Part shown: one piece after another, positions 10,853-59,462 of the stretch
Layout: every line of letters starts with the position of its first letter
How positions within the stretch are numbered: position 1 is the first letter of the stretch
Virus record (IMG/VR): IMGVR_UViG_3300046694_000296
Coordinates: 1 to 64,000 of that record
Reading direction: 5' to 3' (one strand)
DNA length: 64,000 nt
Translations under genes and position numbers: made by a program
Notes under the pieces: model-generated
Database searches by the model: none
What the model saw: only the letters and a program-made list of their open reading frames with translations
Told to the model about the DNA's origin: nothing

Positions 10853-10853
10853 A

Positions 10854-17368: not shown

Positions 17369-17387
17369 TTAGATTGCCGGTAAGTAA

Positions 17388-22375
<4,988 letters not shown>

Positions 22376-36904: not shown

Positions 36905-36951
36905 GATGTTTGCCCCTGCTAACTGGCATTGCCTGTCGGCAAAAAAAGACT

Positions 36952-38712: not shown

Positions 38713-39137
38713 TGGGAGGAATTCCGGTTTCGCGGGAGCGGCTTATTGGGAGTGATCGGATTTTGCACCCCCTTTTCTCCTTTGTCACTGGGAGGATTTC
38801 CGATTCAATGGGAGGAAAACCGGGTTACTGGGAGGATTTCCGGGTCCGGGAGCCTGTGCATAACCCTACTTCGACCGGCTTTTCTCCCAATGCGTGACCG
38901 GTCGCCCTCCTACTTTGACCGGTCGCCCACCCATTTAACCCGGAATCTCTCCCATTACCTGCCTGCAAACCCATGCTGGGTAAGGCTTTGAGCCGTATAC
39001 AAACGTTTAAGAACGTATACAAACCACGCGCGAGTAGGCTGTGAACAACTTCTCGCATCTCTTTGATTACCCGGGATTCCTCCCAATCCAAATATCCCGG
39101 GAATCCTCCCAATTCGCGTAACCCGGAAATTCTCCCA
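38713..39137. repeat. Iteron array / plasmid origin, consensus TGGGAGGAWTTCCGGG
   Basis: Plus copies at 38713, 38789, 38809, 38829; inverted copies at 38875, 38939, 39070, 39096, 39122; degenerate near 38747, 38898, 38919; DnaA-like boxes at 38855-38863 and 39040-39048. Confidence 0.88.
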
Positions 39138-39175
39138 ATAGGACAAGTCCTAAAAGGCAGTCTGCAAAGGGGTGG

Positions 39176-39547
39176 TCAGTCCATGCCCAGGCGCTTCTTC
39201 TCGCGCGCGACTTCCTTGGCTACCGCCTCGGCGATGAAGTCGTTCTTGGTCTTGCCGAGCGCGAAGCAGAGCAGGTTCAAATCCTCCTTCAGCGCTGGCG
39301 GGATGCGAACCGGCTGCTGCACCGGCGTCTCCTTCTTCGGCAGCGCCGCGCGGATGGCCTGCAGATCCACACCTTTACCCACGCGAACCGGCGCCCTCCT
39401 CTCTGCAACGACCACCGGCTCAGGTGCTTGGTCCTCTATCTCCCCCGCCTGAGCTGCGGGCGCCGGCTCATCAATGGCCGCCGTCTCTGCATTCAGGCTG
39501 TCGAGCCACGCTTTGCTTTTCGGTGCGCTCATCGGGTCTTTGCTCAT
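39176..39547 (-). CDS. Partition adaptor, ParG-like ribbon-helix-helix protein
   Basis: Disordered N-terminus plus 'QQPVRIPPALKEDL......GKTKNDFIAEAV' RHH; downstream of parA. Confidence 0.75.
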   Translation of the reverse strand: MSKDPMSAPKSKAWLDSLNAETAAIDEPAPAAQAGEIEDQAPEPVVVAERRAPVRVGKGVDLQAIRAALPKKETPVQQPVRIPPALKEDLNLLCFALGKTKNDFIAEAVAKEVAREKKRLGMD

Positions 39548-40200
39548 GAAAACACTCCAAGGTAAAGGTCTTTCATTTCGTTGGCAGCGGCACTATCCCA
39601 ATCCCGGCCCGAGAGCTCGGACACCGCCCTCCCCTGCGCATTGGCGAACTTGTAGGTTTCACGCGTCGCGACCAGCTTCGTCAGGACCGGCAGCTTGTCC
39701 TCGAACGGCTCCAACTGTTTGATCATCGACTTGGTGAAGCGCTTGCGCGGATCGGCCTGATTGAGCACCACGCGAATGTCGATCTGGCGTTTGTAGCTGC
39801 CGACCAGTGCGTGTAGATCGGGCACCGTGTCGAGGTCCATCTGCGACGGGATCAGCGGCGCGAGCACCTTCTCAGCGACGGCCAGGCCGTAGCGGAAGCC
39901 GTCCGAGTCCTTGCCGCCGACGTCGATGAAAACGTCCTGATACTGATCGGTGAGACGATCGAGCACCTCGGCGAATTCCTGCTTCGTGATCGGCTTGCGC
40001 GGTTCCCACCGCTCGACATGGACCTGCGGAAGAGCCGGGTCGTTAGCGCGGCGTGCCGCCCACTTCGCGGTGCTGTTTTGTCCGTCGAGGTCGAATACGG
40101 CAACCGTGCGCTTGAGCGATGCCCGGATCGCTGCCAAATTCTGGGTGAAGGTAGATTTGCCCACGCCTCCCTTCTCTGTTCCCACCATAATTACGGCCAT
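39544..40200 (-). CDS. parA: ParA partition ATPase (type Ib)
   Basis: Deviant Walker A KGGVGKST, 'DLDGQ', 'FIDVGG'; no N-terminal HTH. Confidence 0.92.
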   Translation of the reverse strand: MAVIMVGTEKGGVGKSTFTQNLAAIRASLKRTVAVFDLDGQNSTAKWAARRANDPALPQVHVERWEPRKPITKQEFAEVLDRLTDQYQDVFIDVGGKDSDGFRYGLAVAEKVLAPLIPSQMDLDTVPDLHALVGSYKRQIDIRVVLNQADPRKRFTKSMIKQLEPFEDKLPVLTKLVATRETYKFANAQGRAVSELSGRDWDSAAANEMKDLYLGVFS

Positions 40201-40310
40201 AGAAGCCTCGATTGAATGTGTGAATTGTGCGTAGAGTAAAGGCTTGCGCCCCACACTTCAAGTAGATTATGAGCATTTGGAACTACGTCGGAGCAATGCA
40301 AGCCACTATT

Positions 40311-41577: not shown

Positions 41578-41650
41578 GCGCCAAGACGCGACCGTTAGAC
41601 TTTTGTCTATCGAATTAAAACCGTTGTTTTTTCTCAATAGGGGAATGACC

Positions 41651-43954
41651 ATGCAGGTGAACAATCGTGTCCTCGTGATGCGCGAGGCGATCACCAAAAT
41701 TGTGCCGATGTTAACTCAACGCTCAGTGCGCGTGACGCAGCAAGGCACGCAAGCATTCGTTGAATACCACGGGACCACGCTGGAGGTGAAGCGCGTCAAC
41801 CTGCCGTATATCCCCGAAGACGCCAGCGACCAACTGCTCGACGCGACGCAGGGCTTCCTCGATCACGAGGTCGGCCACGTCCTGTTCACCGAGCAGCGCT
41901 TTGTGAAAAAGGCCGCGAAGCTCAAGGTCCACTCGCTGCACAACATGGTCGAGGACACGTTCGTCGAGCGGAAGATGGGCGAGAAGTTTCCGGGCTGCGG
42001 CTCGAACCTGACGCGCATGCACGGGTTCTTCCTCACCGAATACATCGACACTCAGCTCGCCGAAAAGCCCGAGCACTCAGCCGCAATCCTGATGGTGGTT
42101 GCGATTCGTGCATGGGCGGGCCAGCCCGCCTTCGTCGACTACATGAAAGACAAGTGGGAGTTGATGAAGGACGTCGTTGACCGTCTCGGTGCCGACTTCC
42201 CGAAGATGGTCCGGGGCGTAGACAGCACCGAGCAGGCGCTCAAGGTCGCGATCGAAGCGAAGAAGCGCCTCGAACCGAAACCGCAGCCGACGCCGCCCGC
42301 GCCGCCGATGACCCCGCCGCCGGCACCGCCCGAGCCGCCGAAGTCGAGCACGCCGCCCGAAGAGCCGCAAGAACCGCAGCAGGGCGGCCAGGGTGACGGC
42401 GAGCCCGACGAGGAAAACGAGAACGACGAGCCGCAGCAGCCCAACGACATGCCGAACTTGGGCGAGCCGGAACCCGAGCAGAGCGCGCCGAGCACCCCGC
42501 AGCCGGAAGGTGACGACGAGGACGACGAACCGAAGGGTGAGGAAGAACAGGAGCCCAACGGTGAGGAGGTTCAGGAGCCGGAACCCGAGCCGACGCCCGA
42601 AGCGGGTGACGAGGAAGACGAGCCCGCACCTGCGCCGAGCAACGAAGCGGGCGATGAGTCCGACGAGGGCGAAGGTGACGACAGCGACGACGAGGATGAA
42701 AACTCGAGCGGTGGCATGTCGGGCGAGGAAGGGGAGAACGACAGCGACGCCGAAGACGAAGGTGCACCGAGCGGCGCGGGTGACGGTCTGCCCGGCGGTG
42801 AGCAGTCTGAGGACAGCGCCGAGAGTGACTCGGGCGACGCAGGTGGTGAGGACGAGAACGGGGCCGGTCAGCAGGACGCGGGCGACCAGCACGGTCACGG
42901 CACGCCGGAAGCAGGGGAGGGCGATCCGACCGGTGGGCGCGATCCGAACGACGATCGCGACTTCATGAAGGAGCTCGAGGACGCTGATATCAAGGAGTTC
43001 GACGAGGCTGCGGCCGAAGCGCTCTCGAAGCAAGCCGTCGAAGCGACCAAGGGCGCGGATTACACCGTGTTCACCCGCGATGAGGACGTGATCGGCGTGC
43101 TCGAAGTGCCGGAGGAGTTCGGGCAAGAGACGGTCACGCACATGCAATCGAAGGTGGACCACATGATCGGCCCGCTCCAGAAAGACCTGCAGCGCGCCAT
43201 TGCTGCCCGCTCGCAAGCAATCTGGACAGGTGGGCACCGGCGCGGCCAGCTGCACGGTGCCTCGCTTGCCCGCGTGCTGACCGGCCGCGAAGACGTGTTC
43301 CGCCAGAAGCAGGTGTCGCGCACGAAAGACGTCGCCGTGTCGCTGCTCGTCGATGGCTCGGGCTCGATGTGGCAGCACGGCAAGATCAAGGTGGCCTCAT
43401 ACGCCGCGTATGCGCTCTCGGCCGTGCTCGACAACATCGGCATCACCAACGAGGTGCTCGCCTTCAGCACGAACGAGTTCAGCTACGGCACGCTCAAAGC
43501 GATGAGCGAGGAGGCCAGCCAGCACCGCCTGCGTTACTCGCGGGGCGCCGCACTTGAGATCCGCATCCTCAAGTCGTTTGCTGAGCGCATGACGCCGATC
43601 GTGCGCCGTCGCTTCGCGCTGCTCTCGCAGGGTGATGCAATGATGCAAGAGAACGTCGATGGCGAGAGCGTGCAAATCGCGAACCACCGTCTCCAGCAGC
43701 AGCGCGCGACGCGCAAGGTGATGATGGTGCTCTCGGACGGGATGCCTGCGGTCAACGGGCACCGTGCCCCGATCCTCGCGAAGCACCTCAAAGAGGTCGT
43801 CAAGCAGATCGAGAAGCGCGGCACCGACGTCGTAGCGCTCGGCATTCTCGACCCGTCGGTTAAACAGTTCTACGACCGCGCGCTCGTCCTGAATTCGGTC
43901 GAGGAGCTGCCGTCGCTGGTCATGAAGGAACTTCACCGCCTCCTGGTGCAGTAA
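41651..43954 (+). CDS. CobT-like vWA protein with N-terminal HExxH domain and acidic linker
   Basis: HEVGH at 41864-41878 plus 'NMVED'; about 250-aa Pro/Asp/Glu linker; MIDAS DGSGS and 'VLSDG'. Confidence 0.85.
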   Translation: MQVNNRVLVMREAITKIVPMLTQRSVRVTQQGTQAFVEYHGTTLEVKRVNLPYIPEDASDQLLDATQGFLDHEVGHVLFTEQRFVKKAAKLKVHSLHNMVEDTFVERKMGEKFPGCGSNLTRMHGFFLTEYIDTQLAEKPEHSAAILMVVAIRAWAGQPAFVDYMKDKWELMKDVVDRLGADFPKMVRGVDSTEQALKVAIEAKKRLEPKPQPTPPAPPMTPPPAPPEPPKSSTPPEEPQEPQQGGQGDGEPDEENENDEPQQPNDMPNLGEPEPEQSAPSTPQPEGDDEDDEPKGEEEQEPNGEEVQEPEPEPTPEAGDEEDEPAPAPSNEAGDESDEGEGDDSDDEDENSSGGMSGEEGENDSDAEDEGAPSGAGDGLPGGEQSEDSAESDSGDAGGEDENGAGQQDAGDQHGHGTPEAGEGDPTGGRDPNDDRDFMKELEDADIKEFDEAAAEALSKQAVEATKGADYTVFTRDEDVIGVLEVPEEFGQETVTHMQSKVDHMIGPLQKDLQRAIAARSQAIWTGGHRRGQLHGASLARVLTGREDVFRQKQVSRTKDVAVSLLVDGSGSMWQHGKIKVASYAAYALSAVLDNIGITNEVLAFSTNEFSYGTLKAMSEEASQHRLRYSRGAALEIRILKSFAERMTPIVRRRFALLSQGDAMMQENVDGESVQIANHRLQQQRATRKVMMVLSDGMPAVNGHRAPILAKHLKEVVKQIEKRGTDVVALGILDPSVKQFYDRALVLNSVEELPSLVMKELHRLLVQ

Positions 43955-44089
43955 ATCTTCCCGCAGGTGAATCACTTTGCCTGCATAGGATAGTAAGTGG
44001 TGACTTGACGTAGCCAAGAGTAACCACTTACTATTTCACCTGTAGCGAATCACAACCAATTTTAATTTTTCTCTGCATCGGAGGATTCA

Positions 44090-45301
44090 ATGAGCGATAC
44101 CGGCGACAAGATCTCTTGCCAGGAGTGCGGCGCGCTGACCCACGCGATCCAGTTGCACCTGCCGGAAGCCCACCCGGGCATGACCCTCGCCGACTACCAG
44201 GCGAAGTTTCCCGAAGCACCTGTGCTGTCCGAGCGCGCGAAAGCCGAGCTCGAGCGCCAGCGTGTCGCAAAGGCCGCTGCAGCGCCCGCAGTCACCGCCT
44301 CGATGGCCGGTAGCGCGCTGCCCGCTAACGTGGTCGCGCTGAACCCCGACGGCAAGACGACCGCCGCGATGCACGAGATCTTCGGCTTGGTCGATGGTCA
44401 TGGGAAACCTGTCGCAGCTGCCTTGAGCTCGCGCAAGGAACCCGTGCCGGTCACGATCTTCGCCTCCCCGCGCGACGCCGACATGGTGCCCGAGATCGAC
44501 GCAGGCTTCATTTTCGACATCGAAAACCTGAAGAATGCGCTGATGGCGATCGAGCTCCGCAAGAACCTCTACGTGTGGGGTCACGCCGGCACCGGTAAGA
44601 CGACGCTGATCGAACAGGTCGCGGCGCGCACCGGGCGTCCGGTCATTCGGGTGCAGCACTCGATCGGCACTGAAGAGTCGCACGTCCTCGGTCAGTGGGT
44701 GGTGCGTGGCGGGCAGACCGAGTTCCAGCCGGGCTTGCTCCCGCTCGCGATGCGCAACGGGTGGACCTACCTCGCGGACGAATACGACTTCGGTAACCCC
44801 GCGGTCCTCGCGGTCTACCAGCCGATTCTCGAACCGGGCAAGAGCCTGGTCATCAAGGATGCGCCCGACGAATGGCGCGTCGTGAAGCCGCACGAGAACT
44901 TCCGCTTCGTCGCAACGGGCAACACCAACGGTTCCGGTGACGACACGGGCCTCTATCAGGGCACGCAGATTCAGAACGCCGCGAACTACGACCGTTTCGG
45001 GATGGTCCTCGAAGCCGCCTACATGAAGCCGGAGCTCGAGTCGGCGATTCTCGTGCAGCGCTGCCGGATTCAGAAGAAGAACGCCGACTCGCTGGTCGAT
45101 TTCGCAAACCGCGTGCGCGAAGCCTACAAGAACAAGGAGATCGGCAGCACGATCTCCCCGCGATGCCTGATCGACGCGGCCGACATCGGTCTGCGACGCG
45201 CGAACTGGCGCGCGGGCGTGACGCTCTCCTTCATCAACAAACTCTCTGCGGTAGACCGCGCTGTCGTCGACGGCGTTGCATCGCGCATCTTCGACAAGTA
45301 A
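44090..45301 (+). CDS. CobS/MoxR-like AAA+ ATPase with N-terminal C2H2-like zinc finger
   Basis: CQEC..H...H; GHAGTGKT; 'ADEYD'; 'FRFVATGNT.G', 'DRF'. Confidence 0.9.
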   Translation: MSDTGDKISCQECGALTHAIQLHLPEAHPGMTLADYQAKFPEAPVLSERAKAELERQRVAKAAAAPAVTASMAGSALPANVVALNPDGKTTAAMHEIFGLVDGHGKPVAAALSSRKEPVPVTIFASPRDADMVPEIDAGFIFDIENLKNALMAIELRKNLYVWGHAGTGKTTLIEQVAARTGRPVIRVQHSIGTEESHVLGQWVVRGGQTEFQPGLLPLAMRNGWTYLADEYDFGNPAVLAVYQPILEPGKSLVIKDAPDEWRVVKPHENFRFVATGNTNGSGDDTGLYQGTQIQNAANYDRFGMVLEAAYMKPELESAILVQRCRIQKKNADSLVDFANRVREAYKNKEIGSTISPRCLIDAADIGLRRANWRAGVTLSFINKLSAVDRAVVDGVASRIFDK

Positions 45302-46609: not shown

Positions 46610-49600
46610 TTGAATATCAAGCATCTGCTTTCCGCGAGGTCGGACTTCTCGCTCGGGGAGTCCACGCTGCAGGTCGGCACCCTGATCGAAACCGCGAAGG
46701 CACAGGGTTACGAGACGGTTGCGCTGGTGGACAACATGTCCATCTCCAACATGGTCGCGTTCACGGACAAGGCGAAGAAAGCGGGGATCAAGCCGATCGT
46801 GGGCTGCACGATCCGCATGGTCGACGATCCGACCTACCGCAAGCCGCCGAAGGCGTCGGGCGAGGTCGAGCGTCCGAACCCGCTCGTCATGCTCAAGGTC
46901 TACGCGAAGACCGACGCGGGCCTGCGCAGCCTCATGAAGCTGCTCTCCAAGGGCAACAGCCCGGAATACTTCTACTATCACTCGCGGGTGGGCCTCGAGG
47001 ACGTGCTGCAGCTGGAAGAGTGCGCGGTCGCGACCGGTGACTTCTACGGCCTGTTCCATCACAAGCGGTGGGAGGAGATCGCGTATCGCCTGAGCGAGAA
47101 GTTCGGCCGCGACTTCTGTGTGGAGTTCGTGCCCGGCGCGACGCCGCTGCACAAGACGCTCAACAAGCTCGCGCTCACCTGCCTCGACCGCTTCACCGCG
47201 ACGCCGATCGGCACCTGGCCCGCGCTCTATGCGACCGACGATCAGGCCGACAGCCTCGACGTGCTGCGCGCGATTCTCGGCAACAACAAGATGACCGACC
47301 GGTGGCTGAACAAGCCCTACCTGCGGAACTTCTCGGTGCGCGCGCCGGGCGATCTGGTGAAGGCGCTCGTCGCCGAAGGCTTGCCCGCGAAAGAGATCAT
47401 CAAAGGCAACCAGGCGCTTGTCGATTCGTGCACGTTCGAATTCAAGAAGCTCGACCCGTGCCTGCCGAAGATGGCAGAGGACGAGTTCAAAGCGCTCTGC
47501 GCCGAAGTCGCGAAGGGCTGGGCGCAACGCTTTGCGGCGCCCGTGCTCGGGCACAAGCCGGAACCCGAAGAGCTGCCGCAATACAAAGCGCGGCTCGCCT
47601 ACGAGCTCGACGTGCTCCGCAAAATGGGCTTCTCGGGCTACTTCCTGCTCGTGCAGCACATCGTCCAGTGGAGCAAGCAAAACGGAATTTTGGTCGGTCC
47701 CGGCCGCGGGAGCGTTGGCGGTTCCCTCGTCGCTTACCTGATGGGAATCACGGACGTCGATCCGATCCGCTTCAATCTGCTGTTCGAGCGCTTCATCAAT
47801 CCGGAGCGTCTCGACTTGCCCGACGCCGACCTCGACTTCATGTCCAAGCGCCGGCACGAGGTGATCGATTACATCGCCACTCACTTCGGGCGCGAGAACG
47901 TCGCGGGCGTGTCCAACTACAACACGATGGGCGCCGCGGGCGTGATGCGCGATACGTCGCGTGTCCACGAACTCAACCCGTTCGACTATGCCTGCTCGAA
48001 GCAGATGGAAAAGCAGCACGGGGTGTCGCTCTCGCTGGAGGAGTCGGCCGCGATCGTGCCAGAGATCGACAAGTTCAAGGGCAGCTTCCCGGACATTTGG
48101 AAGCACATGGTGAACCTCGAAGGTGCCGCGCGCGGTCTTGGGCAGCATGCAGCGGGCGTCATCGTCGCGGGCGAGCCGATCGTCAACCGCGCCGTGGTCG
48201 AAACCCGCACGGGCGGGCCGGTCTGCAATTGGGACAAGCGAACGGTCGAGGACTTCGGGCTCATCAAGATGGACATTTTGGGCTTGACTAACCTCGACGT
48301 GATGAAGCTCGCCGCCGACTACATCAAGGAGCGGCACGGCAAGACGATCGACTTCCTGCGGCTGCCGCTCGACGACAAGAAGGTGCTGGAAGCATTCGGG
48401 CGGGGCGACACCACGGGCGTGTTCCAGTTCGAGTCGCCCGGCATGCGCCGGCTCTTGCGTGAGATGGCGCTATCGGGCGCGGTGACGTTCGACGATCTGG
48501 TGGCGGTGGTCGCGCTGTATCGCCCGGGTCCGCTCGACGCGGGTCTGTGCGACGACTACGTGGCGATCAAGCAGGGTTCCAAGCAGCCGTATTACGAGCA
48601 CCCGAACATGGCCCCTGCGCTCAAGGACACCTACGGGGTGATCGTGTATCAGGAGCAGGTGATGCAGATCGCGCGTGACCTGGCGGGCTTCTCGATGGCG
48701 GGCGCCGACCATCTGCGTAAAGCGATGGGTAAGAAGGACAAGGAGAAGATGGCCGAAATGCGCGACAAGTGGGTGGCCGGTTGCGTGTCGCACTCGGGCA
48801 TGACCGAAGGCTCGGCCAATGCGCTCTTCGACAAGATCGAAGTGTTCGCCGGATACGCCTTCAACAAATCGCACTCAGTGGAGTATGCGGTCATCAGCTG
48901 GTGGACGATGTGGCTGAAGGTCAACTACCCGGCCGAATACTTTGCGGCCTCGCTCACTGAGATCGACAAAGAAGAGAAGCGCGAGCCGCTCGTGCAGGAT
49001 GCGCGGCGCATGAGCATGCAGGTGTTGCCGCCCGATATAAACCGGTCAAGCGCCCGGGTAGAGATCGTGGGCGAGGATAAGCTCTACGCCCCGTTCCAGG
49101 CGCTCAAGGGTTTATCCGAGAAGGCGGCAGGCTACATCGTAGACGCACGCATAAAGTGGGGCAAGCCGTTCGCGAACCGCACCGACTTCGACGCCGCAAT
49201 GAAGGCGGCAGGCTACACCGGCCGGCACATCAACCAGGCGGTCAAGGACAAACTCGTGCTGATCGGTGCCTTCGCCGAGTGCGAGGGCGACAAGGTGCCC
49301 GCCATGCACCCCGATCGGCTGAAAAACCGCATCGAGCTACTGCCAGGTTTCACGGTCGATACTGTGAAAGCTGACCGAACGCTTAACGCTGAGCACCTCG
49401 CCTTGCTGCAATTGGTGCGCATCGGTGAGGAGACGCGCTCGTGCGAGAAGTGCTCGCTCAAGGGCGGCTGTCACCCGATGCCGCGCATCGGGAAGACGCC
49501 GAAGTTCATGGTCGTGTCCGACAACCCGAACTGGCAGGAGGAAAAGGCAGGGAAGCTCCTCGAAGGCGATAACGCGAAGCTCGTCATCAACGCGTTGAAG

Positions 49601-49954
49601 GAAGCGGGGCTCTCGGCACAGGACGGGTATTTCACGACGCTCGTGAAGTCCGGCAAGCCGAAGGATCAGAAGACGCTCACGAACGAACAGATCAACGGTT
49701 GCTCCGAATACCTCAAGCGCGAGCTGGAGATTCTCAAGCCGCCGGTGGTCGTGACACTCGGGAGCAACGCGGCGCGCTTCTTTGCGCCGGGCGTGAAGGG
49801 CGGCTCGATGGAGCTCGCGGGCAAGGTCATCTTCGACCCGAAGCTCGACGCCTCGATTGTTTTTGGCATCAACCCGGGGCAGATTTTCCATGACCCGGGC
49901 AAGTATTCCGTTTTGCAAACCGTGGCCGCGAAGGTGGCCGACCTTATCACCTGA
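46610..49954 (+). CDS. dnaE: DNA polymerase III alpha subunit with C-terminal UDG-like domain
   Basis: 'GPGRGSVGGSLVAY', 'FERFINPER..LPDADLDF', 'HAAG', 'KMDILGL', 'GYAFNKSH'; last ~175 aa resemble family-4 UDG. Confidence 0.95.
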   Translation: MNIKHLLSARSDFSLGESTLQVGTLIETAKAQGYETVALVDNMSISNMVAFTDKAKKAGIKPIVGCTIRMVDDPTYRKPPKASGEVERPNPLVMLKVYAKTDAGLRSLMKLLSKGNSPEYFYYHSRVGLEDVLQLEECAVATGDFYGLFHHKRWEEIAYRLSEKFGRDFCVEFVPGATPLHKTLNKLALTCLDRFTATPIGTWPALYATDDQADSLDVLRAILGNNKMTDRWLNKPYLRNFSVRAPGDLVKALVAEGLPAKEIIKGNQALVDSCTFEFKKLDPCLPKMAEDEFKALCAEVAKGWAQRFAAPVLGHKPEPEELPQYKARLAYELDVLRKMGFSGYFLLVQHIVQWSKQNGILVGPGRGSVGGSLVAYLMGITDVDPIRFNLLFERFINPERLDLPDADLDFMSKRRHEVIDYIATHFGRENVAGVSNYNTMGAAGVMRDTSRVHELNPFDYACSKQMEKQHGVSLSLEESAAIVPEIDKFKGSFPDIWKHMVNLEGAARGLGQHAAGVIVAGEPIVNRAVVETRTGGPVCNWDKRTVEDFGLIKMDILGLTNLDVMKLAADYIKERHGKTIDFLRLPLDDKKVLEAFGRGDTTGVFQFESPGMRRLLREMALSGAVTFDDLVAVVALYRPGPLDAGLCDDYVAIKQGSKQPYYEHPNMAPALKDTYGVIVYQEQVMQIARDLAGFSMAGADHLRKAMGKKDKEKMAEMRDKWVAGCVSHSGMTEGSANALFDKIEVFAGYAFNKSHSVEYAVISWWTMWLKVNYPAEYFAASLTEIDKEEKREPLVQDARRMSMQVLPPDINRSSARVEIVGEDKLYAPFQALKGLSEKAAGYIVDARIKWGKPFANRTDFDAAMKAAGYTGRHINQAVKDKLVLIGAFAECEGDKVPAMHPDRLKNRIELLPGFTVDTVKADRTLNAEHLALLQLVRIGEETRSCEKCSLKGGCHPMPRIGKTPKFMVVSDNPNWQEEKAGKLLEGDNAKLVINALKEAGLSAQDGYFTTLVKSGKPKDQKTLTNEQINGCSEYLKRELEILKPPVVVTLGSNAARFFAPGVKGGSMELAGKVIFDPKLDASIVFGINPGQIFHDPGKYSVLQTVAAKVADLIT

Positions 49955-50639: not shown

Positions 50640-50785
50640 AGGATCTTTCAACCTTTTCGAGGTCCGGTAAGTGACGCGTTACTATACTTGACGATGCAGG
50701 GCGAGACGGTGACGAAGCTGTCACAGCCTCGTCCGCAAAACCTGTGACTTACTACCTCCAAACTCTGACTAAGGAAACAAAAACC

Positions 50786-51826
50786 ATGTCTACTCAAGCT
50801 CTGATGGAACTGCTGCAAAAGCGCAAGGCTGCAACCGGTGGTCAAAAGACGATCAAGCCGAAGGCTGGTCGCAACCGTTACCGCATCCTCCCGGGATGGC
50901 GCACGAACGGTGACCCGACGTTCTTCCATGACTTCGGCCAGCACTTCATCAAGGACGCGGCGGGGCAGGTGAAGGCGGTCTACATTTGCGCGGACAAGAC
51001 CTTCGGTCGTCCGTGCGAGGTGTGCGATGCGGTCGCGCAGGGCATCCAGATGTCCACCGACGACGTGCAGAAGAAGCGCGTCGAGGAAGCGAAGTCGAGC
51101 GGCCGCGTGCTGCTCAACGTCCTCGAGCTCGACGGCACGCAGCCGACGGTGCCGCAGATTCTCGAAGTCGCGCCGACGGTGTTCAACGGCAAGAAGGGCG
51201 TGGGCGGCATCATCGCGCTGTTCGACGAATGGCCCAACATGCTCGACCCGAACACCGGCAACGACATCATCGTCGAAAAGTCGGGCGCGGGCCTCGACAC
51301 GGCCTACAGCGTGCAGATCGCGGGTGCCTCGAAGCCGGTTCCGGCCGAAGCGCTCACGAAGCTGAACGATCTCGACGCCTACGTGATGCAGGAAAACGCG
51401 CAAGCGCAGCAGCGCGCTCTCGCCTCGGTGCGTCAGGTCGCGGGCCTCCCGGCCCCGACGCAGACCTACCAGCCGGCCGCAGCACTCCCGGCAGGTGCGT
51501 CGAACGTCTACACCGCGCAGGGGGCGACACCGTGGGAAGCCGACGAGACGCTCGACATCGGCACGCTCGCGAACCCGGCAGTGGCCGCAGCAGTTGCGAC
51601 GCCCGCTCAGCCGGTCGCAGCAGCGCCGGTGCAGCCCGCAACTGCCGAAGTGGCAGCGGCGGTCGCAGCGGTCGCCACGCAGGTTGCGCAGCCGGTGGCA
51701 GTCGCACAGCCCGCAGTCGCGACGCCTGCACCCGCAGCAGTGGCCCAGCCCGCAGTTGCAGCAGCCCCGGCTGCCGCAGCAGGCACGGGCGACCCGGAGC
51801 TCGACGCTCTGCTCGCGGGCCTGTAA
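50786..51826 (+). CDS. gp32-like single-stranded DNA-binding protein
   Basis: 'G.N.YRILP', 'HF....C....G..CEVC', 'DP..GND..V.K.G.GL.T.Y'; Ala/Pro linker and acidic tail DPELDALLAGL. Confidence 0.78.
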   Translation: MSTQALMELLQKRKAATGGQKTIKPKAGRNRYRILPGWRTNGDPTFFHDFGQHFIKDAAGQVKAVYICADKTFGRPCEVCDAVAQGIQMSTDDVQKKRVEEAKSSGRVLLNVLELDGTQPTVPQILEVAPTVFNGKKGVGGIIALFDEWPNMLDPNTGNDIIVEKSGAGLDTAYSVQIAGASKPVPAEALTKLNDLDAYVMQENAQAQQRALASVRQVAGLPAPTQTYQPAAALPAGASNVYTAQGATPWEADETLDIGTLANPAVAAAVATPAQPVAAAPVQPATAEVAAAVAAVATQVAQPVAVAQPAVATPAPAAVAQPAVAAAPAAAAGTGDPELDALLAGL

Positions 51827-51894: not shown

Positions 51895-52833
51895 GTGGCA
51901 AACACATTCCTTGTTGACGCGAACTCCATCGGTCGCGCATCGCATTCCGGCACCGTGCTCACGGTCGGCAAGTTCCAGACGCAGGCGGTCTTCGGGTTTG
52001 TGCGCTCAATGGGCGCGCTGTATCGCGACTATCCGGCGTTCGAAAAGTCATTCGTGCTGTGGGACGGACGCGCGGACTTTCGTTACGCGATCCACCCCGG
52101 CTACAAGGGCAAGCGCAAAGACGCGCTGGTCGATCCGGTAAAGGCTGCTGAGCGCGCGGCATACGACGCACAAGTGCCCTTCATCAAGAAGGCGCTCGAT
52201 CTGTTGGGCGTGCCACAGATGGTGAACGCCGAGCGCGAAGCAGACGACCTCGGGGGCTTTCTCGTGCCGCGCTTGACGAAAACGGGGAAGGTGCTGCTAG
52301 TCACGGGCGACACCGACTGGTGGCAGCTCGTCGGCCCGAACTGCGATTGGTTCGATCCTCGCAAAGCGGGCATGTATGTGTCGCTCGAAGACTTCTTCCA
52401 GAAGACCGGCTACTTCACCCCGGACGAATACATCGAGGGCAAGGCGCTGATCGGGGATACGACCGACGACATTCCGCCGGCCGGCGGCATCGGTAAGAAG
52501 GGCGCACCGGAGTTCATGGCGCAGTTTCGCTCGATGCAGAAGTTCCGCGACATGTGCGACGCGGGCGAATTTCAGCCGAAGCTCAAGAAGCACGTCGAGC
52601 TGTGGAAGGGCGAGAGCCGCCGCAACTGGGACAGGAACATGCAGCTCATGGACCTGCGCAACGCGCCCGCACCGGACCCGGCGAAGACCACGATCACGCA
52701 GGGCACGCTCAACGAGGATGGGTTTCGCGCGCTGTGTGAGCGCCTCGCATTTCGGTCGATTCTCGCGCAATGGGATCACTTCATGACCCCGTTTCGCCAA
52801 CGTTACCAGGCGCGTCTCGCGCGCGCCGCTTGA
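51895..52833 (+). CDS. 5'-3' exonuclease / flap endonuclease (T4 RNase H-like)
   Basis: 'LVDANS', 'YKGKR', 'EADD', 'TGDTDW.QL', 'GDTTDDIP..GGIGKK'. Confidence 0.92.
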   Translation: MANTFLVDANSIGRASHSGTVLTVGKFQTQAVFGFVRSMGALYRDYPAFEKSFVLWDGRADFRYAIHPGYKGKRKDALVDPVKAAERAAYDAQVPFIKKALDLLGVPQMVNAEREADDLGGFLVPRLTKTGKVLLVTGDTDWWQLVGPNCDWFDPRKAGMYVSLEDFFQKTGYFTPDEYIEGKALIGDTTDDIPPAGGIGKKGAPEFMAQFRSMQKFRDMCDAGEFQPKLKKHVELWKGESRRNWDRNMQLMDLRNAPAPDPAKTTITQGTLNEDGFRALCERLAFRSILAQWDHFMTPFRQRYQARLARAA

Positions 52834-52845
52834 AGGACAAAGAAC

Positions 52846-53100
52846 ATGGACGACATTGTGATTGAAAAGCACGTCCCGCCGCCGAAGGCAGGACACGGTT
52901 CATGGGGCAGCGTGCTCGCCCGCATGGAGGTCAACGACTCGTTTGTCGCTGACGACGAGAAGGCAGCGCGCGGGGCGATTCGCACCGCGGCCGCGCGCCT
53001 GAACATCGCCCTGACGATCCGCAAGGAAGTGGACGCAGACGGGAAACTTATCGAAGGAAAAATGCGCGTGTGGCGCATCGAAAAGGAGCAAGCAGAATGA
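52846..53100 (+). CDS. Small putative DNA-binding protein
   Basis: 'IEK.VP.P......W...L..MEV.DSF......RVWR' motif. Confidence 0.65.
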   Translation: MDDIVIEKHVPPPKAGHGSWGSVLARMEVNDSFVADDEKAARGAIRTAAARLNIALTIRKEVDADGKLIEGKMRVWRIEKEQAE

Positions 53101-54155
53101 GCATCGCAGACGATCTGGCAAAAGCAATCATGGGTGCAGTGGGTGAGTCCGACGCCGAGCTCGAGGTTCCCGGCTACATCGACACCGGCTACGAGCCGCT
53201 CAACGAGATCCTCTCGGGCGACCCGAAGAACGGCGGCATCGCGATGGGTCGCATCTTCGAAATCTTCGGCCCGTCATCGTCGGGCAAGACGTGGCTTGCC
53301 ACGCAGCTCATGAAGCAGGCGCAGGTGATGGGCGGCATCGCGCTGTTCATGGACCACGAACTGACCTTCCAGCAGCCGTTCGCTGAGAAGTCGGGCCTCA
53401 CGACGGAGTTCCCGTGGTTCATCTACAAGCGCCCCGATACGTGGGAAGCCTCGAACACGATGGCTCTGCAAGCGGCCGACGCGATTCGCAAGAGCAAGAA
53501 GCTCGATCCGCTGGCGCCCATCGTAGTCGTGTTCGATTCGGTCGCCGCGATGATCCCGCAGTCCGTGTTCGAGAAGGGCATCACGGACTACAACATGAAC
53601 GACACGACGGCGCTCGCTCGCGTGTCCTCGACGACGCTCAAGTCCATCAACCAGCAGTCGGCGAAGATGAATGTGACGATCGTCTACCTGAACCAGATCC
53701 GCACGAAGCCGGGCGTGGTCTACGGTGACCCGACGACGACCCCGGGCGGCTCGGCGTTCGAGTTCTATGCCACCGGCCGTCTCGCGTTGGGCAAGAAGTT
53801 CATCAAGGCGAAGGTCAACGGCAAGGACGAGATCGTCGGACAGCTGATGGGCATCGAGACGAAGAAGAACAAGCTGGCTCGCCCGCGTCAAGAGGTCGAT
53901 CTGCGCCTGCAGTTCCTCGACGATGGCATGACGACCGTGAACCTGACGCTCTCGCTGCTCGACCACGCGGTCGCCGTGGGCAAGCTGAAGAAGCTCTCCA
54001 CGGGCCGCATCGAGTGGATCAACGGGTCGAGCTACCCGCCGGGCCAGCTCGCGGACATGATCGACAAGGGCGGCCTGAAGACGGCGCTCCTGCACGTCAT
54101 CTACCCGAACCACTACCCGGCGCCCGCAGTCGCCCCGGTCGCGGCAGCAGCCTAA
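53097..54155 (+). CDS. recA: RecA/UvsX-like recombinase
   Basis: 'GRIFEIFGPSSSGKT', 'VFDSVAAM', 'NQIR.K.GV.YGDP.TTPGG', 'KNK'. Confidence 0.93.
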   Translation: MSIADDLAKAIMGAVGESDAELEVPGYIDTGYEPLNEILSGDPKNGGIAMGRIFEIFGPSSSGKTWLATQLMKQAQVMGGIALFMDHELTFQQPFAEKSGLTTEFPWFIYKRPDTWEASNTMALQAADAIRKSKKLDPLAPIVVVFDSVAAMIPQSVFEKGITDYNMNDTTALARVSSTTLKSINQQSAKMNVTIVYLNQIRTKPGVVYGDPTTTPGGSAFEFYATGRLALGKKFIKAKVNGKDEIVGQLMGIETKKNKLARPRQEVDLRLQFLDDGMTTVNLTLSLLDHAVAVGKLKKLSTGRIEWINGSSYPPGQLADMIDKGGLKTALLHVIYPNHYPAPAVAPVAAAA

Positions 54156-56435: not shown

Positions 56436-57500
56436 ATGCAGCCATACGGGGTGCTTTCCGATTCACATTGTCACGACTGGTCCGCATTCGCGACCGAAAA
56501 CGACGACCTGATTAATACGCGGCTCGCAGTCATCCTCGACGAGATCGAGCGGTGCGCGGCCGAAGTGCACAAGGTGGGCGGGGATACCGTCTACCACGCG
56601 GGCGACCTGTTCCACGTTCGCGGGCGCATCGCGCCGAGCGTGCTGAACCCGACGCGGGATCGCTTCGAACACATCTACCGGACCTACGGCGTGAAGTTCC
56701 GCCTGCTCCCGGGCAATCACGACCTGGAACACAAGCACAGCAATCGCGTGGGCAACGCCATCGAGGCGATGCGCAGCCAGTGGGTCGAGGTCGGCCACGA
56801 CACGCAGGTGTTCGCCGAGCACAACGTCCTGATGGTCCCGTGGGTCGAGGGTGTCGCGGATCTGAAGAAGCGCCTCGAGTTGGAGCGCGACAACCTGCTC
56901 ACGCAGGGCGAAGACCCGGCCAACTACAACCTCATCATCCATGCGCCGATCGACGGCGTGATCGAGGGCTTGCCCGACCACGGCCTCACCGGCGAGTGGC
57001 TCGCAGCGCTCGGCTTCAAGCGGGTGTTCAGCGGCCACTATCACAACCACAAGGAGATCGCGCCCGGCAAGGTGTGGTCGGTGGGTGCCACGACGCACCA
57101 GACATGGGGTGATACCGGCAGCAAAGCGGGCTTCCTGATCGTTTCGACCGAGGACGTGAAGTGGCACTGCTCGCGCGCGCCGCACTTCGTGGACATCGAA
57201 GCGGGCATGGACCCGAGCGAAGTCGCGCTGCGCTGCGACGGCAACTACATTCGCGTCAAGGTCAGCAACGCGAAGCCTTCCGAGGTCAGCGCGATCCGCG
57301 ATGGTCTGATGAAACACGGCGCGCTCGGCGTGAACGTGAACGTGGTGAAGGTGCCGACGACGGGCCGCGCATCGACGAGCACAGTGAAAGCGGGCGCATC
57401 GGTCGAGGTGCAGGTGACGGATTACATCAAAGCGGCGGGCTTCGAGCACGCCGATCTGGTCGCGCAGGGCGCGATCAGTGTTCTCGCGGAGGCAGTGTAA
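56436..57500 (+). CDS. SbcD/Mre11-like nuclease (gp47-like)
   Basis: SDSH, GDLFH, GNHD, GHYH metallophosphoesterase motifs. Confidence 0.92.
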   Translation: MQPYGVLSDSHCHDWSAFATENDDLINTRLAVILDEIERCAAEVHKVGGDTVYHAGDLFHVRGRIAPSVLNPTRDRFEHIYRTYGVKFRLLPGNHDLEHKHSNRVGNAIEAMRSQWVEVGHDTQVFAEHNVLMVPWVEGVADLKKRLELERDNLLTQGEDPANYNLIIHAPIDGVIEGLPDHGLTGEWLAALGFKRVFSGHYHNHKEIAPGKVWSVGATTHQTWGDTGSKAGFLIVSTEDVKWHCSRAPHFVDIEAGMDPSEVALRCDGNYIRVKVSNAKPSEVSAIRDGLMKHGALGVNVNVVKVPTTGRASTSTVKAGASVEVQVTDYIKAAGFEHADLVAQGAISVLAEAV

Positions 57501-59462
57501 ATGGAAATTCTCAAACTTCGGGCAGTCAACTTCCTGACGCTCGGCGACTCGGGCGACCTGTTGCTCAAGGACCGCGGGCTCGTCCTCATTCAGGGCGTGA
57601 ACAAGGACGACACATCAACCGAATCGAACGGTGCGGGCAAGAGCTCCATCGCCGACGCACTGTGCTGGGCGCTCTTTGGCGCGACCGCGCGCGAAGAGTC
57701 CGGTGATTCGGTCATCAATGAGAAGGCGAAGAAGGGCACCTACGTGTCCGTCGTCGTGCAGGACGGCGAGACGATCTACGACATTCGTCGCCACCGCAAG
57801 GACAAGCAGTTCAAGAACGCGACCACAATCACGCGCTGGAACCCGGCCGTCGAGTATCAGAACGGCGCGCAGGGCGAGCGCATCGAGAAGGGCACCGAGA
57901 AAGAGATCCAGCTCCAGATCAACGAGATCGTCGGCTGCAACTACGACGTGTTCAAGTCGGCGATCTACGCGGGCCAGGAGGACATGCCCGACCTGCCGAA
58001 AATGACCGACAAGCCGCTCAAGATGCTGATCGAGAAGGCGTCGGGCATCGAGCGGCTCGAATCGGCCTACAACATCGCGAACCGCAAGCACGACGAGGCG
58101 AAGGCGGCGGTCGAGTCGGTCAACACGAAGATGGGGCTCTTGGAGAACCAGATCGTCAACTGGAAGGTGTCGGTTGCGCAGCTGGAGACGCAGCACGCAC
58201 AGTTCGAGGCCGCGCGCCCGAGCGTGCAACAGCAGTTCCTCGACCAGGCTGCGGCTGCCGCCGATGCGCTCAAGAAGAACTTCGCCGCCTATCAGGGACT
58301 CAACGAGGCCGCAGCAGCGAAGGAACGCGACGAGTTGCAAGCGATCCTCGCAGATCACCGCAAGTTCACCGACCAGCGCGACCAGCTGCTCAAGGCAGAG
58401 CATGCGGCGTCGCGTGCGTATCACGCCCGGAAGGGCGACTTCGAGCGCGCCCGCGCGCAAGTGTTGGCAGCGGTCGAAGCGGTGAAGAACGCGCCGGCTG
58501 CGATGGAAAAGCCCTGCACCGAGTGCGGCAAGCCCCACACCGCCGAAGAGAAGGACGAGTTCGTCGCGCACCAGACCAAGCGCGCGAAGGAGCTGAGTGT
58601 CACCGCCGGTCAGATCCAGACCGAGGTGACGGAGCTGCAGAACGTCGCGGCCGCCGCCGGGAAAGAGCTCGAAGAGTTTACGGCGACGATCCCTGACGTG
58701 TCGGCGACCAGCACCCGGCTCGCGCAGGTGCAGCAGACACTCACCGCGTGCCAGCAGTTGAAGAACGTGATCCAGCGTCAGAAGGCCGACCACGATCGTC
58801 TGAAGGAAGAAGGGCAGAAGGCGCTCGTCGCGGTCAACCCGCACCAGTCGGCGATCGACATGGGCCGGGAGAACGTCGGCAAATGCGAGCAGGCGATCGA
58901 CAAGCTGAAAGCCGACGCGGCCGAGCGCATCAAGGCGGCCGAGGTTGCCGCGAGCGTCGCGAAGGTGTTCAGCCCCGGTGGCGTGCGCGCGCAGATTCTT
59001 GATACGGTGACGCCGTTCCTGAACGACCGCACGAGCGACTACCTCTCCGCGCTCTCGGACGGGAACATCAGCGCCGTCTGGTCGACGCTCACGACGACCA
59101 CGAAGGGCGAGCTCCGCGAGAAGTTCAACATTGAAGTCGAGAACGCCACGGGCGCAAAGTCGTTCGGTGGTCTGTCGGGCGGGGAAAAGCGCAAGGTGCG
59201 GCTCGCGACGATGCTCGCGCTGCAAGACTTGGTTGCCTCGCGCGCGACGAAGCCGCTCTCCCTCTGGGTGGGCGACGAGATCGACGATGCGCTGGACGCA
59301 GCGGGCCTCGAGCGCCTCATGACCGTGCTGGAGCAGAAGGCGCGCGAGAAGGGCACCGTGCTCATCATCAGCCACGAGTCGCTGTCCGATTGGTGTGACC
59401 AAATCGCCACCGTCACGAAGGAGGGCGGGCAATCGACGGTCAGCGGGGCGCTGTCGGCATGA
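57501..59462 (+). CDS. SbcC/Rad50-like ATPase (gp46-like)
   Basis: NGAGKSS, CTEC zinc hook in coiled coil, LSGGE, 'DEIDDALD', 'IISH'. Confidence 0.93.
   Translation: MEILKLRAVNFLTLGDSGDLLLKDRGLVLIQGVNKDDTSTESNGAGKSSIADALCWALFGATAREESGDSVINEKAKKGTYVSVVVQDGETIYDIRRHRKDKQFKNATTITRWNPAVEYQNGAQGERIEKGTEKEIQLQINEIVGCNYDVFKSAIYAGQEDMPDLPKMTDKPLKMLIEKASGIERLESAYNIANRKHDEAKAAVESVNTKMGLLENQIVNWKVSVAQLETQHAQFEAARPSVQQQFLDQAAAAADALKKNFAAYQGLNEAAAAKERDELQAILADHRKFTDQRDQLLKAEHAASRAYHARKGDFERARAQVLAAVEAVKNAPAAMEKPCTECGKPHTAEEKDEFVAHQTKRAKELSVTAGQIQTEVTELQNVAAAAGKELEEFTATIPDVSATSTRLAQVQQTLTACQQLKNVIQRQKADHDRLKEEGQKALVAVNPHQSAIDMGRENVGKCEQAIDKLKADAAERIKAAEVAASVAKVFSPGGVRAQILDTVTPFLNDRTSDYLSALSDGNISAVWSTLTTTTKGELREKFNIEVENATGAKSFGGLSGGEKRKVRLATMLALQDLVASRATKPLSLWVGDEIDDALDAAGLERLMTVLEQKAREKGTVLIISHESLSDWCDQIATVTKEGGQSTVSGALSA

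What the first reader, a model, noticed from the sequence alone, without database searches (positions are those of the whole stretch)
49420..49954. DnaE ends in a catalytically degenerate family-4 uracil-DNA glycosylase domain
Seen: after the polymerase core comes CEKC-SL...'KFMVVSDNPNWQEE..G..L.G'...'YFTTLVKS'...'C..YLKRELEILKP.VVVTLG..A'...'INPG'. Established: family-4 UDGs have GE(A/G)PG, N..KCRP and HPA motifs with four Fe-S cysteines, and SPO1 polymerase carries a UDG-like domain on a family A enzyme. Here the motifs read SDNPN, T..KSGK and NPG. The usual DnaE C-terminal OB/tau-binding region appears replaced, and the PHP metal ligands are also degenerate. Inference: a non-catalytic DNA-binding/processivity or modified-base-sensing module, reminiscent of poxvirus D4.
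Basis: partly seen in the sequence, partly recalled or inferred. Interest (0 to 1): 0.65.

Follow-up and report, generated by a model that had tools for sequence, protein, structure and literature searches.

The report
Phage-plasmid DnaE polymerase with altered UDG-fold tail
The replicative DNA polymerase of this phage-plasmid ends in a true uracil-DNA-glycosylase fold whose catalytic residues are replaced by a different, strictly conserved set; the fusion itself is already known, but the function of the altered pocket has not been tested.

Summary
ORF 46610-49954 (+, 1114 aa) is a DnaE-type polymerase made of PHP, Pol III core, fingers and HhH domains. Its last ~180 residues are a family-4 UDG domain (Pfam PF03167 E 6e-13; PDB 4zbx E 7e-15; AlphaFold model TM 0.77-0.83 to 4zby/1vk2/1ui0). 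No OB or tau-binding domain is present.

The canonical residues are substituted. Motif A Glu becomes D971. The uracil-reading Asn becomes T1010. Motif B His becomes N1088 and its Arg becomes H1094. The third Fe-S Cys becomes S1014.

'Degenerate' is the wrong word, though. D971, T1009, K1013 and N1088-P1089 are among only 23 of 202 columns invariant across DnaE-UDG branches 26-42% identical (nickie, RHEph10, SSU5, ANB28). The domain is also better conserved than the PHP and HhH domains.

C945, C948, H955 and C1031 are kept or lost together, which suggests a remodelled Cys3His metal site.

The architecture was reported in 2014 (Timinskas et al.) for Yersinia and Salmonella extra polymerases. The window is an SSU5-like phage-plasmid.

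Best reading: a DNA-binding module that does not excise uracil and replaces the OB domain. A probable internal beta-clamp motif is retained at 907-911. An altered-specificity glycosylase is not excluded. I found no evidence of base modification.

The parts
46610..49954 (+). dnaE-type (C-family) DNA polymerase gene, 1114 aa, TTG start, fused C-terminally to a UDG-fold domain
   Evidence: ORF list and translation. Pfam finds PHP, DNA_pol3_alpha, DNA_pol3_finger, HHH_6 and UDG. PHROG 405 'DNA polymerase' matches residues 7-1113 at E 1.5e-291. Full-length AF2 model: pLDDT 91.6, pTM 0.82.
46637..47065 (+). PHP domain (Pfam residues 10-152) with non-canonical metal-ligand positions (S8, R10, E17, N42, T67)
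   Evidence: Pfam PF02811 E 4.4e-17. Alignment to E. coli alpha residues 10-73. The family consensus also lacks the HxH pair.
47504..48790 (+). Pol III alpha catalytic core (residues 299-558) and fingers (561-727)
   Evidence: PF07733 E 4.5e-74 and PF17657 E 5.6e-58. These are the most conserved parts of the family.
49016..49291 (+). HhH / beta-binding domain (residues 803-894)
   Evidence: PF14579 E 1.2e-10. Aligns to E. coli alpha 741-891, ending at GAFDRL, which matches GAFAEC 886-891 here.
49328..49351 (+). Candidate internal beta-clamp-binding peptide RIELLPGF (residues 907-914). Family consensus is [RQ]-[LI]-E-L-[ML]-P-G-F; the forms in SSU5, ANB28 and RHEph10 are QAELM, QLELM and QLELL.
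   Evidence: E909 and L910 are invariant in deep branches, and P912 and G913 are at least 97% conserved. The peptide lies ~20 residues after the HhH domain, where E. coli alpha has QADMF 920-924 (PMC3201878). Inferred only: the complex prediction gave no verdict.
49394..49951 (+). Family-4 UDG-fold domain (residues ~929-1114, including the N-terminal helix 929-943)
   Evidence: PF03167, PDB sequence matches, AF2 domain model and Foldseek.
49442..49474 (+). C945-x2-C948-x6-H955: two canonical Fe-S cysteines plus a family-specific His
   Evidence: 116/120 conserved each. C945, C948, H955 and C1031 are lost together in P0102, P0110 and P0117 and in SSU5, RHEph10 and ANB28. All four are present in nickie.
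49517..49531 (+). Motif A equivalent SDNPN (970-974), where the canonical motif is GE[AG]PG. D971 sits at the Glu position.
   Evidence: D971 120/120 and P973 120/120. D is invariant in all deep DnaE-UDG branches. Alignments to 4zbx and to type-4 UDGs.
49628..49651 (+). YFTTLVKS (1007-1014), where the canonical motif is [FY]xTNxxKC. Asn becomes T1010 and the third Fe-S Cys becomes S1014.
   Evidence: Alignments. Position 1010 is S/A/T in the family and position 1014 is S/A/V.
49700..49702 (+). C1031, the retained fourth canonical Fe-S cysteine
   Evidence: 117/120 conserved. Aligns with the Cys of ACSPYL in 4zbx.
49871..49891 (+). Motif B equivalent NPGQIFH (1088-1094), where the canonical motif is HP[SA]xxxR. 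His becomes N1088 and Arg becomes H1094.
   Evidence: N1088 111/120 and P1089 114/120. N-P is invariant in deep branches while all canonical and PolA-fused comparators have H-P.

Best explanation
This is the replicative C-family polymerase of an SSU5-like phage-plasmid. The OB and tau-binding domains of cellular DnaE have been replaced by a complete family-4 UDG fold. The fold is intact, but the residues that family-4 enzymes use to excise uracil are replaced family-wide. The water-activating Glu is Asp. The uracil-reading Asn is a small residue. The leaving-group His is Asn. The intercalation-loop Arg is Phe or His. The Fe-S site is remodelled to Cys3His here and is absent in other branches. 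Most likely the domain no longer removes uracil. Instead it serves as a built-in DNA-binding module next to the clamp-binding peptide. It would hold template or single-stranded DNA, possibly with a base flipped into the conserved pocket, which is the job the OB domain does in cellular DnaE. Processivity would come from the host beta clamp through the retained QLELM-like motif. Proofreading would come from a phage-encoded DnaQ-like exonuclease rather than from the PHP domain. Shown here: the fold, the substitutions, their conservation, the co-variation of the metal ligands, and the gene content. Inferred: loss of uracil excision, DNA binding as the selected function, clamp use, and the exonuclease partnership.
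For: Fold and family. Substitutions at positions whose roles are established for family-4/UdgX enzymes (E52 activates water, N91 and H178 hydrogen-bond uracil, R184 binds DNA; PMC10359453). Purifying selection: the UDG domain averages 61% identity to the window protein, against 46% for PHP and 45% for HhH. Pocket-equivalent positions D971, Y1007, T1009, K1013 and N1088-P1089 are among 23/202 columns invariant across five branches 26-42% identical. The Fe-S site is dispensable: all four ligands are absent in SSU5, RHEph10 and ANB28 while the D and N-P motifs persist. OB/CTD replacement; Timinskas 2014. Clamp motif position and conservation. No phage DnaN or clamp loader. DnaQ-like exonuclease at G000 70083-70562 and non-canonical PHP ligand positions. 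No AP endonuclease of the ExoIII or Nfo type that would complete phage-encoded BER. Precedent: N4-like PolA carries a family-4 UDG domain without catalytic residues, proposed to be a processivity module (PMC10201439).
Against: No biochemical data exist for any member. The strict conservation of a carboxylate (D971) and of Asn-Pro in motif B is what a working active site would also show. A purely structural DNA clamp would not need these exact residues. Serbin-type PolA-fused UDG domains also have Asp at the Glu position while keeping His and all four Cys, so Asp may be compatible with catalysis. I could not read model coordinates. The position of the domain relative to the template path and the geometry of the Cys3His site are therefore untested. 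The clamp-binding prediction gave no verdict.
Confidence: 0.55

Rival explanations
1. The domain is still a DNA glycosylase, with a changed mechanism or specificity. D971 would activate the water. N1088 would play the role Asn plays in motif B of MUG-type enzymes. Loss of the uracil-specific Asn would open the pocket to another lesion or base. The polymerase would then carry replication-coupled base surveillance, like the SP15-like PolA-UDG enzymes.
For: D971 and N1088-P1089 are invariant over very deep divergence. The carboxylate is kept at the exact Glu position. Asp occurs at this position in otherwise intact PolA-fused UDG domains such as Serbin. Active fused UDG domains that read template dU ahead of the polymerase are demonstrated for YerA41 and phiLo PolA (PMC13697223). 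The phage encodes a ligase and a FEN.
Against: Both residues that stabilise the uracilate leaving group (Asn and His) and the DNA-binding Arg are changed together. The stacking Phe is Leu or Met. No AP endonuclease (ExoIII- or Nfo-type) was found in the genome; polymerase X was not searched for. The metal site is lost in several branches.
Confidence: 0.22
2. The domain is mainly a protein-protein hub. It would replace the tau-binding CTD and couple the polymerase to the phage DnaB-like helicase, primase or gp32-like SSB.
For: The tau-binding domain is missing and no tau or clamp loader is encoded. The phage encodes its own helicase, primase and SSB. UDG proteins bind polymerase cofactors in poxviruses and herpesviruses (PMC13697223 introduction).
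Against: The invariant residues sit at active-site-equivalent positions rather than on a new surface. No interaction was tested.
Confidence: 0.12
3. The domain is the intrinsic processivity factor, as proposed for vaccinia D4 and for the SPO1/T5 polymerases. On this view the polymerase needs no sliding clamp.
For: No phage clamp or clamp loader is encoded. The idea was proposed for UDG-PolA enzymes (PMC3201878; PMC10201439).
Against: The beta-binding (HhH) domain and a QLELM-like peptide are conserved at the place of the E. coli QADMF motif. This points to use of the host clamp.
Confidence: 0.15
4. The domain senses a modified base in a hypermodified phage genome.
For: UDG-PolA fusions cluster in phages with T-modified DNA (PMC13697223).
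Against: The genome encodes ThyX and RNR and no ThyA-like hydroxymethylase or dUTPase. The same fusion occurs in SSU5/pHCM2-type elements of enterobacteria, which replicate as ordinary plasmids. The element assembled from ordinary sequencing reads.
Confidence: 0.04

Closest known systems
DnaE with UDG domain in Yersinia pestis and Salmonella enterica extra polymerases ('DnaEX' variant, Timinskas et al. 2014, PMC3919608), matched in the phage collection by phage SSU5 and related E. coli/Klebsiella records; PHROG 405
   Same: Same architecture: PHP-Pol3-fingers-HhH with OB and CTD replaced by PF03167. Full-length match to PHROG 405. tblastn finds the same C-terminal domain in SSU5, nickie, RHEph10 and ANB28. 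D in motif A and N-P in motif B are shared.
   Different: Only 27-41% identical in this domain. The window clade and nickie keep a Cys3His site that SSU5, RHEph10 and ANB28 lack. The 2014 paper named the domain but did not discuss its catalytic residues.
[quoted passage not shown] 2023, PMC10201439)
   Same: A phage replicative polymerase fused to a family-4 UDG fold whose canonical catalytic residues are not conserved. A processivity or DNA-binding role has been proposed.
   Different: It is an A-family polymerase with an N-terminal fusion, and the N4 domain has deletions. Here the polymerase is C-family, the fusion is C-terminal, the fold is complete, and a conserved alternative residue set is present.
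SP15-like and SPO1-like PolA-UDG (Missoury et al. 2026, PMC13697223)
   Same: A polymerase-fused family-4 UDG fold. Foldseek matches phiLo 9qhs_A and SP-15 DNAP.
   Different: Those domains keep motifs UDG-A and UDG-B and excise template dU. Several of their phages have T-hypermodified DNA and encode PolX and a ligase. Here the motifs are changed and no modification genes were found.
Stand-alone family-4 UDGs and UdgX (4zbx, 1vk2, 1ui0, 6ail)
   Same: Same fold over ~185 residues at 21-24% identity. The N-terminal CxxC and the last Cys are shared.
   Different: The window has SDNPN for GE[AG]PG, TT for TN, KS for KC, and NPGQIFH for HP[SA]xxxR.
Vaccinia D4 with A20
   Same: A UDG-fold protein working as part of a viral replicase.
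   Different: D4 is a family-1 UDG, a separate catalytically active protein, bound to a B-family polymerase through A20. The resemblance is by analogy only.
Family-2 MUG/TDG
   Same: Asn rather than His in motif B (NPSGLS in E. coli MUG, from my own knowledge). Weaker structural matches to TDG and MUG (TM ~0.6).
   Different: The sequence and fold are clearly closer to family 4, and motif A differs (GINPG in MUG).

Membership tests
UDG superfamily, family 4 | Alpha/beta UDG fold and profile match | tested here: met
   PF03167 scores 49.6 bits against a cut-off of 24.3. Foldseek TM 0.77-0.83 to 4zby, 1vk2 and 1ui1.
UDG superfamily, family 4 | Motif A GE[AG]PG with Glu | tested here: not met
   The window has SDNPN. 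D971 sits at the Glu position and both flanking Gly residues are absent.
UDG superfamily, family 4 | Asn in [FY]xTNxxKCRP that reads uracil | tested here: not met
   T1010 in the window; S/A/T in the family.
UDG superfamily, family 4 | Motif B HP[SA]xxxR | tested here: not met
   NPGQIFH. N1088 is 111/120 conserved and H occurs in 1/120.
UDG superfamily, family 4 | Four Cys ligands of a [4Fe-4S] cluster | tested here: not met
   C945, C948 and C1031 are kept; the third Cys is S1014. H955 co-varies with the three Cys and may be a substitute ligand. The metal content is untested.
UDG superfamily, family 4 | Uracil excision activity | not testable with these tools
   Needs a biochemical assay.
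C-family DNA polymerase, DnaE type | PHP + Pol3 catalytic core + fingers + (HhH)2 | tested here: met
   PF02811, PF07733, PF17657 and PF14579 are all above their cut-offs.
C-family DNA polymerase, DnaE1 (cellular replicase) | C-terminal OB domain and tau-binding CTD | tested here: not met
   No OB or CTD match. The sequence after the HhH domain is the UDG fold.
DnaE-UDG fusion of phage-plasmids (PHROG 405; Timinskas 'DnaEX' UDG variant) | Full-length collinear match including the C-terminal UDG domain | tested here: met
   phrog_405 E 1.5e-291 over residues 7-1113. 271 word-search hits, and all 120 listed carry PF03167 together with the Pol III domains. tblastn to SSU5, nickie and RHEph10.
SSU5-like phage-plasmid | Plasmid replication and partition genes together with phage genes on a ~105-120 kb element | tested here: met
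   Rep3, ParA and iteron-like repeats. Unit length ~107 kb. Relatives sit on 104-115 kb contigs. Structural genes were not examined.
N4-like UDG-PolA | A-family polymerase with N-terminal UDG | tested here: not met
   The polymerase is C-family and the domain is C-terminal.

The most novel reading that the evidence does not exclude
The conserved Asp / small-residue / Asn-Pro pocket could be a working site. It would be either a glycosylase of new specificity or a non-cleaving 'read-ahead' base sensor that flips template bases ahead of a C-family replicase. That would make this the first C-family polymerase with built-in template-base surveillance. The Cys3His metal site would be an evolutionary intermediate on the way to cluster-free forms.
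Probability: 0.2. Interest if true: 0.7.

Novelty: new member of a known kind. Interest (0 to 1): 0.38.

Why it matters
Phage-plasmids of the SSU5/pHCM2/pMT1 kind are common in enterobacteria, Pseudomonas, Rhizobium and Burkholderia. Their own replicase has never been studied biochemically. The domain that replaced the OB and tau-binding module is under strong selection, with an active-site-like pocket built from non-canonical residues. Knowing whether it binds, senses or cuts DNA would show how a C-family polymerase works without tau. It would also show whether replication-coupled base surveillance, just demonstrated for A-family phage polymerases, also exists in the C family. The all-or-none pattern of the Cys3His ligands gives a natural series for asking what the metal site does in family-4 UDG folds.

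Tried and rejected
1. Complex prediction of residues 880-1114 with the E. coli beta-clamp dimer returned no verdict (score 0.01). It counts neither for nor against clamp binding.
2. Near-identity DNA searches in the phage and plasmid collections found only a 234-bp conserved core stretch in Rhizobium and Sinorhizobium elements. No annotated close relative was available.
3. A word search with the domain alone found no stand-alone family with the same altered motifs. It returned only fragments or split pieces of DnaE, followed by canonical type-4 UDGs at weak E-values.
4. Modified-DNA hypothesis: I looked for ThyA-type hydroxymethylase and dUTPase and found none, while ThyX is present.
5. Phage-encoded BER: I looked for ExoIII- and Nfo-type AP endonucleases and found none.
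6. Model coordinates are not exposed to scripts. I therefore could not measure the Cys/His geometry or the position of the domain relative to the polymerase cleft.
7. Literature searches for a functional study of a DnaE-UDG fusion found only the architectural mention in PMC3919608.
8. The large profile search (search of protein representatives) was not run, because the family scans had already settled the identity.
Full report
**The sequence.** CEKC is at residues 945-948. SDNPN is at 970-974. YFTTLVKS is at 1007-1014. The C..YLKRELEILKPPVVVTLG string starts at 1031. INPG is at 1087-1090. The finding's coordinates 49420-49954 cover residues ~938-1114 plus the stop codon.

**Domain content.** Pfam gives PHP at 10-152 and the DNA_pol3_alpha core at 299-558 (E 4.5e-74). 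It gives fingers at 561-727 (E 5.6e-58), HHH_6 at 803-894, and UDG PF03167 at 962-1071 (E 5.7e-13; 49.6 bits against a cut-off of 24.3). No OB or tau-binding domain is found. PHROG 405 ('DNA polymerase') matches residues 7-1113 at E 1.5e-291. The whole fusion, tail included, is therefore an established phage protein family.

**The tail is a real family-4 UDG fold.**
- phmmer against PDB sequences gives Sulfolobus tokodaii UDG 4zbx at 7.4e-15, Thermotoga 1vk2 at 1.2e-13, Thermus 1ui0 at 2.2e-12, and UdgX at ~1e-6.
- A profile of 90 family members raises 4zbx to 5.8e-21.
- An AlphaFold2 model of residues 915-1114 (pLDDT 92.8, pTM 0.90) matches 4zby, 4zbx, 1l9g, 1vk2 and 1ui1 at TM 0.77-0.83 and E ~1e-13 over ~188 columns. 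Family-5 UDG and TDG/MUG follow far behind.
- In the viral structure library it matches stand-alone phage UDGs and the UDG domains of many phage PolA enzymes, including SP-15.
- The full-length model is also confident (pLDDT 91.6, pTM 0.82).

**Catalytic residues.** I aligned the domain to 4zbx and 1vk2, to nine bacterial type-4 UDGs, and to phage UDG domains. These give one consistent mapping.

| Canonical family-4 feature | Window |
|---|---|
| Motif A GE[AG]PG | SDNPN (Glu becomes D971) |
| Stacking Phe in GxPFxG | L984 |
| [FY]xTNxxKC | YFTTLVKS (Asn becomes T1010; third Fe-S Cys becomes S1014) |
| Motif B HP[SA]xxxR | NPGQIFH (His becomes N1088; Arg becomes H1094) |

For family-4/UdgX enzymes the roles of these residues are established. 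Glu activates the water. Asn and His hydrogen-bond uracil and stabilise the uracilate. Arg binds DNA (PMC10359453). An ordinary, fully active UDG is therefore unlikely.

**The substitutions are fixed, not decayed.** Among 120 relatives that are at least 52% identical in this domain, D971 and P973 are invariant. T1009 is 118/120, K1013 is 110/120, N1088 is 111/120 (His in only 1), and P1089 is 114/120.

I then compared five deep branches that are only 26-42% identical to each other. These were the window protein, Pseudomonas phage nickie, Rhizobium phage RHEph10, Salmonella phage SSU5 and Stenotrophomonas phage ANB28. Only 23 of 202 gap-free columns are invariant. They include D971, Y1007, T1009, K1013 and N1088-P1089. 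All canonical and PolA-fused comparators have His-Pro at the last site.

Domain-wise, the UDG region averages 61% identity to the window protein. That is close to the fingers (64%) and well above PHP (46%) and HhH (45%). The pocket is therefore under purifying selection with a new residue set. A carboxylate is retained at the Glu position. Asn-Pro in motif B is what E. coli MUG has (my knowledge). Serbin-type PolA-fused UDG domains also use Asp there while keeping His and all four Cys. 'Non-catalytic' is thus a reasonable inference for uracil, but it is not demonstrated.

**Metal site.** C945, C948 and C1031 correspond to three of the four canonical [4Fe-4S] ligands. The fourth is S1014, which is S/A/V in the family. 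A family-specific His, H955, is conserved 116/120. The three family members that lack C945 (P0102, P0110, P0117) lack C948, H955 and C1031 as well. SSU5, RHEph10 and ANB28 lack all four, and nickie has all four. This all-or-none pattern suggests the four residues form one Cys3His site. It also shows that the site is dispensable for whatever the fused domain does.

**What the element is.** The window encodes the following:
- a Rep3 initiator at 37969-38712 (-), with iteron-like repeats at 38784-39139, and ParA at 39544-40254 (-)
- a CobT-like VWA protein and a MoxR-type ATPase just upstream of dnaE
- a DnaB-like helicase at 28689-30077, a DnaG-like primase at 30288-31520, and an ATP-dependent ligase at 32738-34168
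- a gp32-like SSB at 50744-51826, a FEN at 51895-52833, and a RecA-like protein at 53070-54155
- Mre11/Rad50 at 56436-59462 and an RNR large subunit at 61120-63393

Relatives of the polymerase lie on 104-115 kb contigs, including Paraburkholderia and Burkholderia cepacia records. The same C-terminal domain is found in nickie-like, RHEph10-like and SSU5-like phages of 103-122 kb. This is an SSU5-type phage-plasmid.

The source record holds no DnaN, no clamp loader, no ThyA, no dUTPase, no ExoIII- or Nfo-type AP endonuclease, and no second UDG. It does hold ThyX and a DnaQ-like exonuclease.

**PHP domain.** Aligned to E. coli alpha residues 10-73, the five N-terminal metal-ligand positions read S8, R10, E17, N42 and T67. 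The family consensus agrees. Together with the phage DnaQ-like gene, it suggests an E. coli-style arrangement in which PHP binds a separate proofreader. That arrangement is inferred.

**Clamp motif.** The match to E. coli alpha ends at GAFDRL 886-891, which aligns to GAFAEC 886-891 here. About twenty residues later comes RIELLPGF (907-914). The family consensus is [RQ]-[LI]-E-L-[ML]-P-G-F. It reads QLELL in RHEph10, QKELL in nickie, QAELM in SSU5 and QLELM in ANB28, with E909 and L910 invariant. This resembles the QL[SD]LF clamp-binding consensus. It lies where E. coli alpha has QADMF 920-924; the same argument was used for phage 0305phi8-36 in PMC3201878. With no phage clamp encoded, use of the host clamp is the simplest reading. 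It makes a D4-like role as the sole processivity factor less necessary. A complex prediction with E. coli beta gave no verdict and is not used as evidence.

**Prior knowledge.** Timinskas et al. 2014 (PMC3919608) described a DnaE variant in some Yersinia pestis and Salmonella enterica strains. In it, OB and CTD are replaced by an archaeal-type UDG domain (PF03167). The RHEph10 GenBank note lists 'uracil-DNA glycosylase-like'. For A-family polymerases, N4-like enzymes have a family-4 UDG domain without catalytic residues, with a processivity role proposed (PMC10201439). SP15-like enzymes have an active one that excises template dU ahead of synthesis (PMC13697223). The UDG-as-processivity idea dates to at least 2011 (PMC3201878). 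I found no paper on the catalytic residues or function of the DnaE-fused domain.

**Verdict.** The fusion is a new member of a known architecture. The canonical catalytic set is gone, but it has been replaced by a conserved alternative set.

My best explanation (about 0.55) is a DNA-binding module that does not excise uracil. It would take over the ssDNA/template-handling role of the OB domain beside the clamp-binding peptide. An altered-specificity glycosylase or read-ahead sensor (about 0.2) is the interesting alternative. Protein coupling (about 0.1) and modified-base sensing (below 0.05) follow.

Noticed in passing
whole source record G000 (window = bases 1-64000 of it): The 215,656-bp 'virus record with direct terminal repeats' is two related but distinct ~107-kb genomes joined head to tail. 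Collinear blocks are 74-90% identical at an offset of ~107,251 bp. The terminal repeat is only 127 bp, a typical assembler k-mer length. This is either a chimeric assembly of two co-occurring strains or a cointegrate. Both halves carry a DnaE-UDG gene.
   Followed up: partly
window 37969-40254: Plasmid maintenance module: Rep3-type initiator (37969-38712, -), three short arrays of 20-26-bp iteron-like repeats (38784-39139), and ParA (39544-40254, -). It lies in the lowest-GC part of the window.
   Followed up: partly
window 41603-45301: A CobT-like VWA protein (783 aa) and a MoxR/CbbQ-type AAA ATPase (403 aa) lie directly upstream of dnaE. Their role in a phage-plasmid is unexplained.
   Followed up: no
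window 26742-27302: A small protein with an N-terminal zinc ribbon and a tRNA_anti-like OB fold (PF12869, E 1.3e-20) is encoded near the helicase and primase genes. It is a separately encoded OB-fold protein in a genome whose DnaE has lost its OB domain.
   Followed up: no
window 36390-36480: A GCGGGT hexamer repeated ~15 times lies inside ORF 36242-36973 (-), which has no Pfam match.
   Followed up: no
G000 65338-65943 and 70083-70562 (just beyond the window): ThyX and a DnaQ-like (RNase_T family) exonuclease. The second is the likely separate proofreading subunit for a DnaE whose PHP domain lacks metal ligands.
   Followed up: partly
window 5370-21821: Three very long + strand ORFs (1494, 1861 and 1476 aa) were seen in the ORF list and not examined.
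   Followed up: no
related proteins P0121, P0129; PHROGs 4335 and 13175: In some relatives the C-terminal piece exists as a separate gene product. Examples are a 315-aa HhH+UDG protein and a 203-aa UDG-only protein, the latter on a 110,811-bp contig. This suggests split dnaE genes or frameshifts.
   Followed up: no
locus L011 (Methanobacterium virus PhiF1): [quoted passage not shown] Its UDG keeps the Asn, KC and HPS motifs but has GLNPG in motif A. This is the opposite domain order to the window protein.
   Followed up: no
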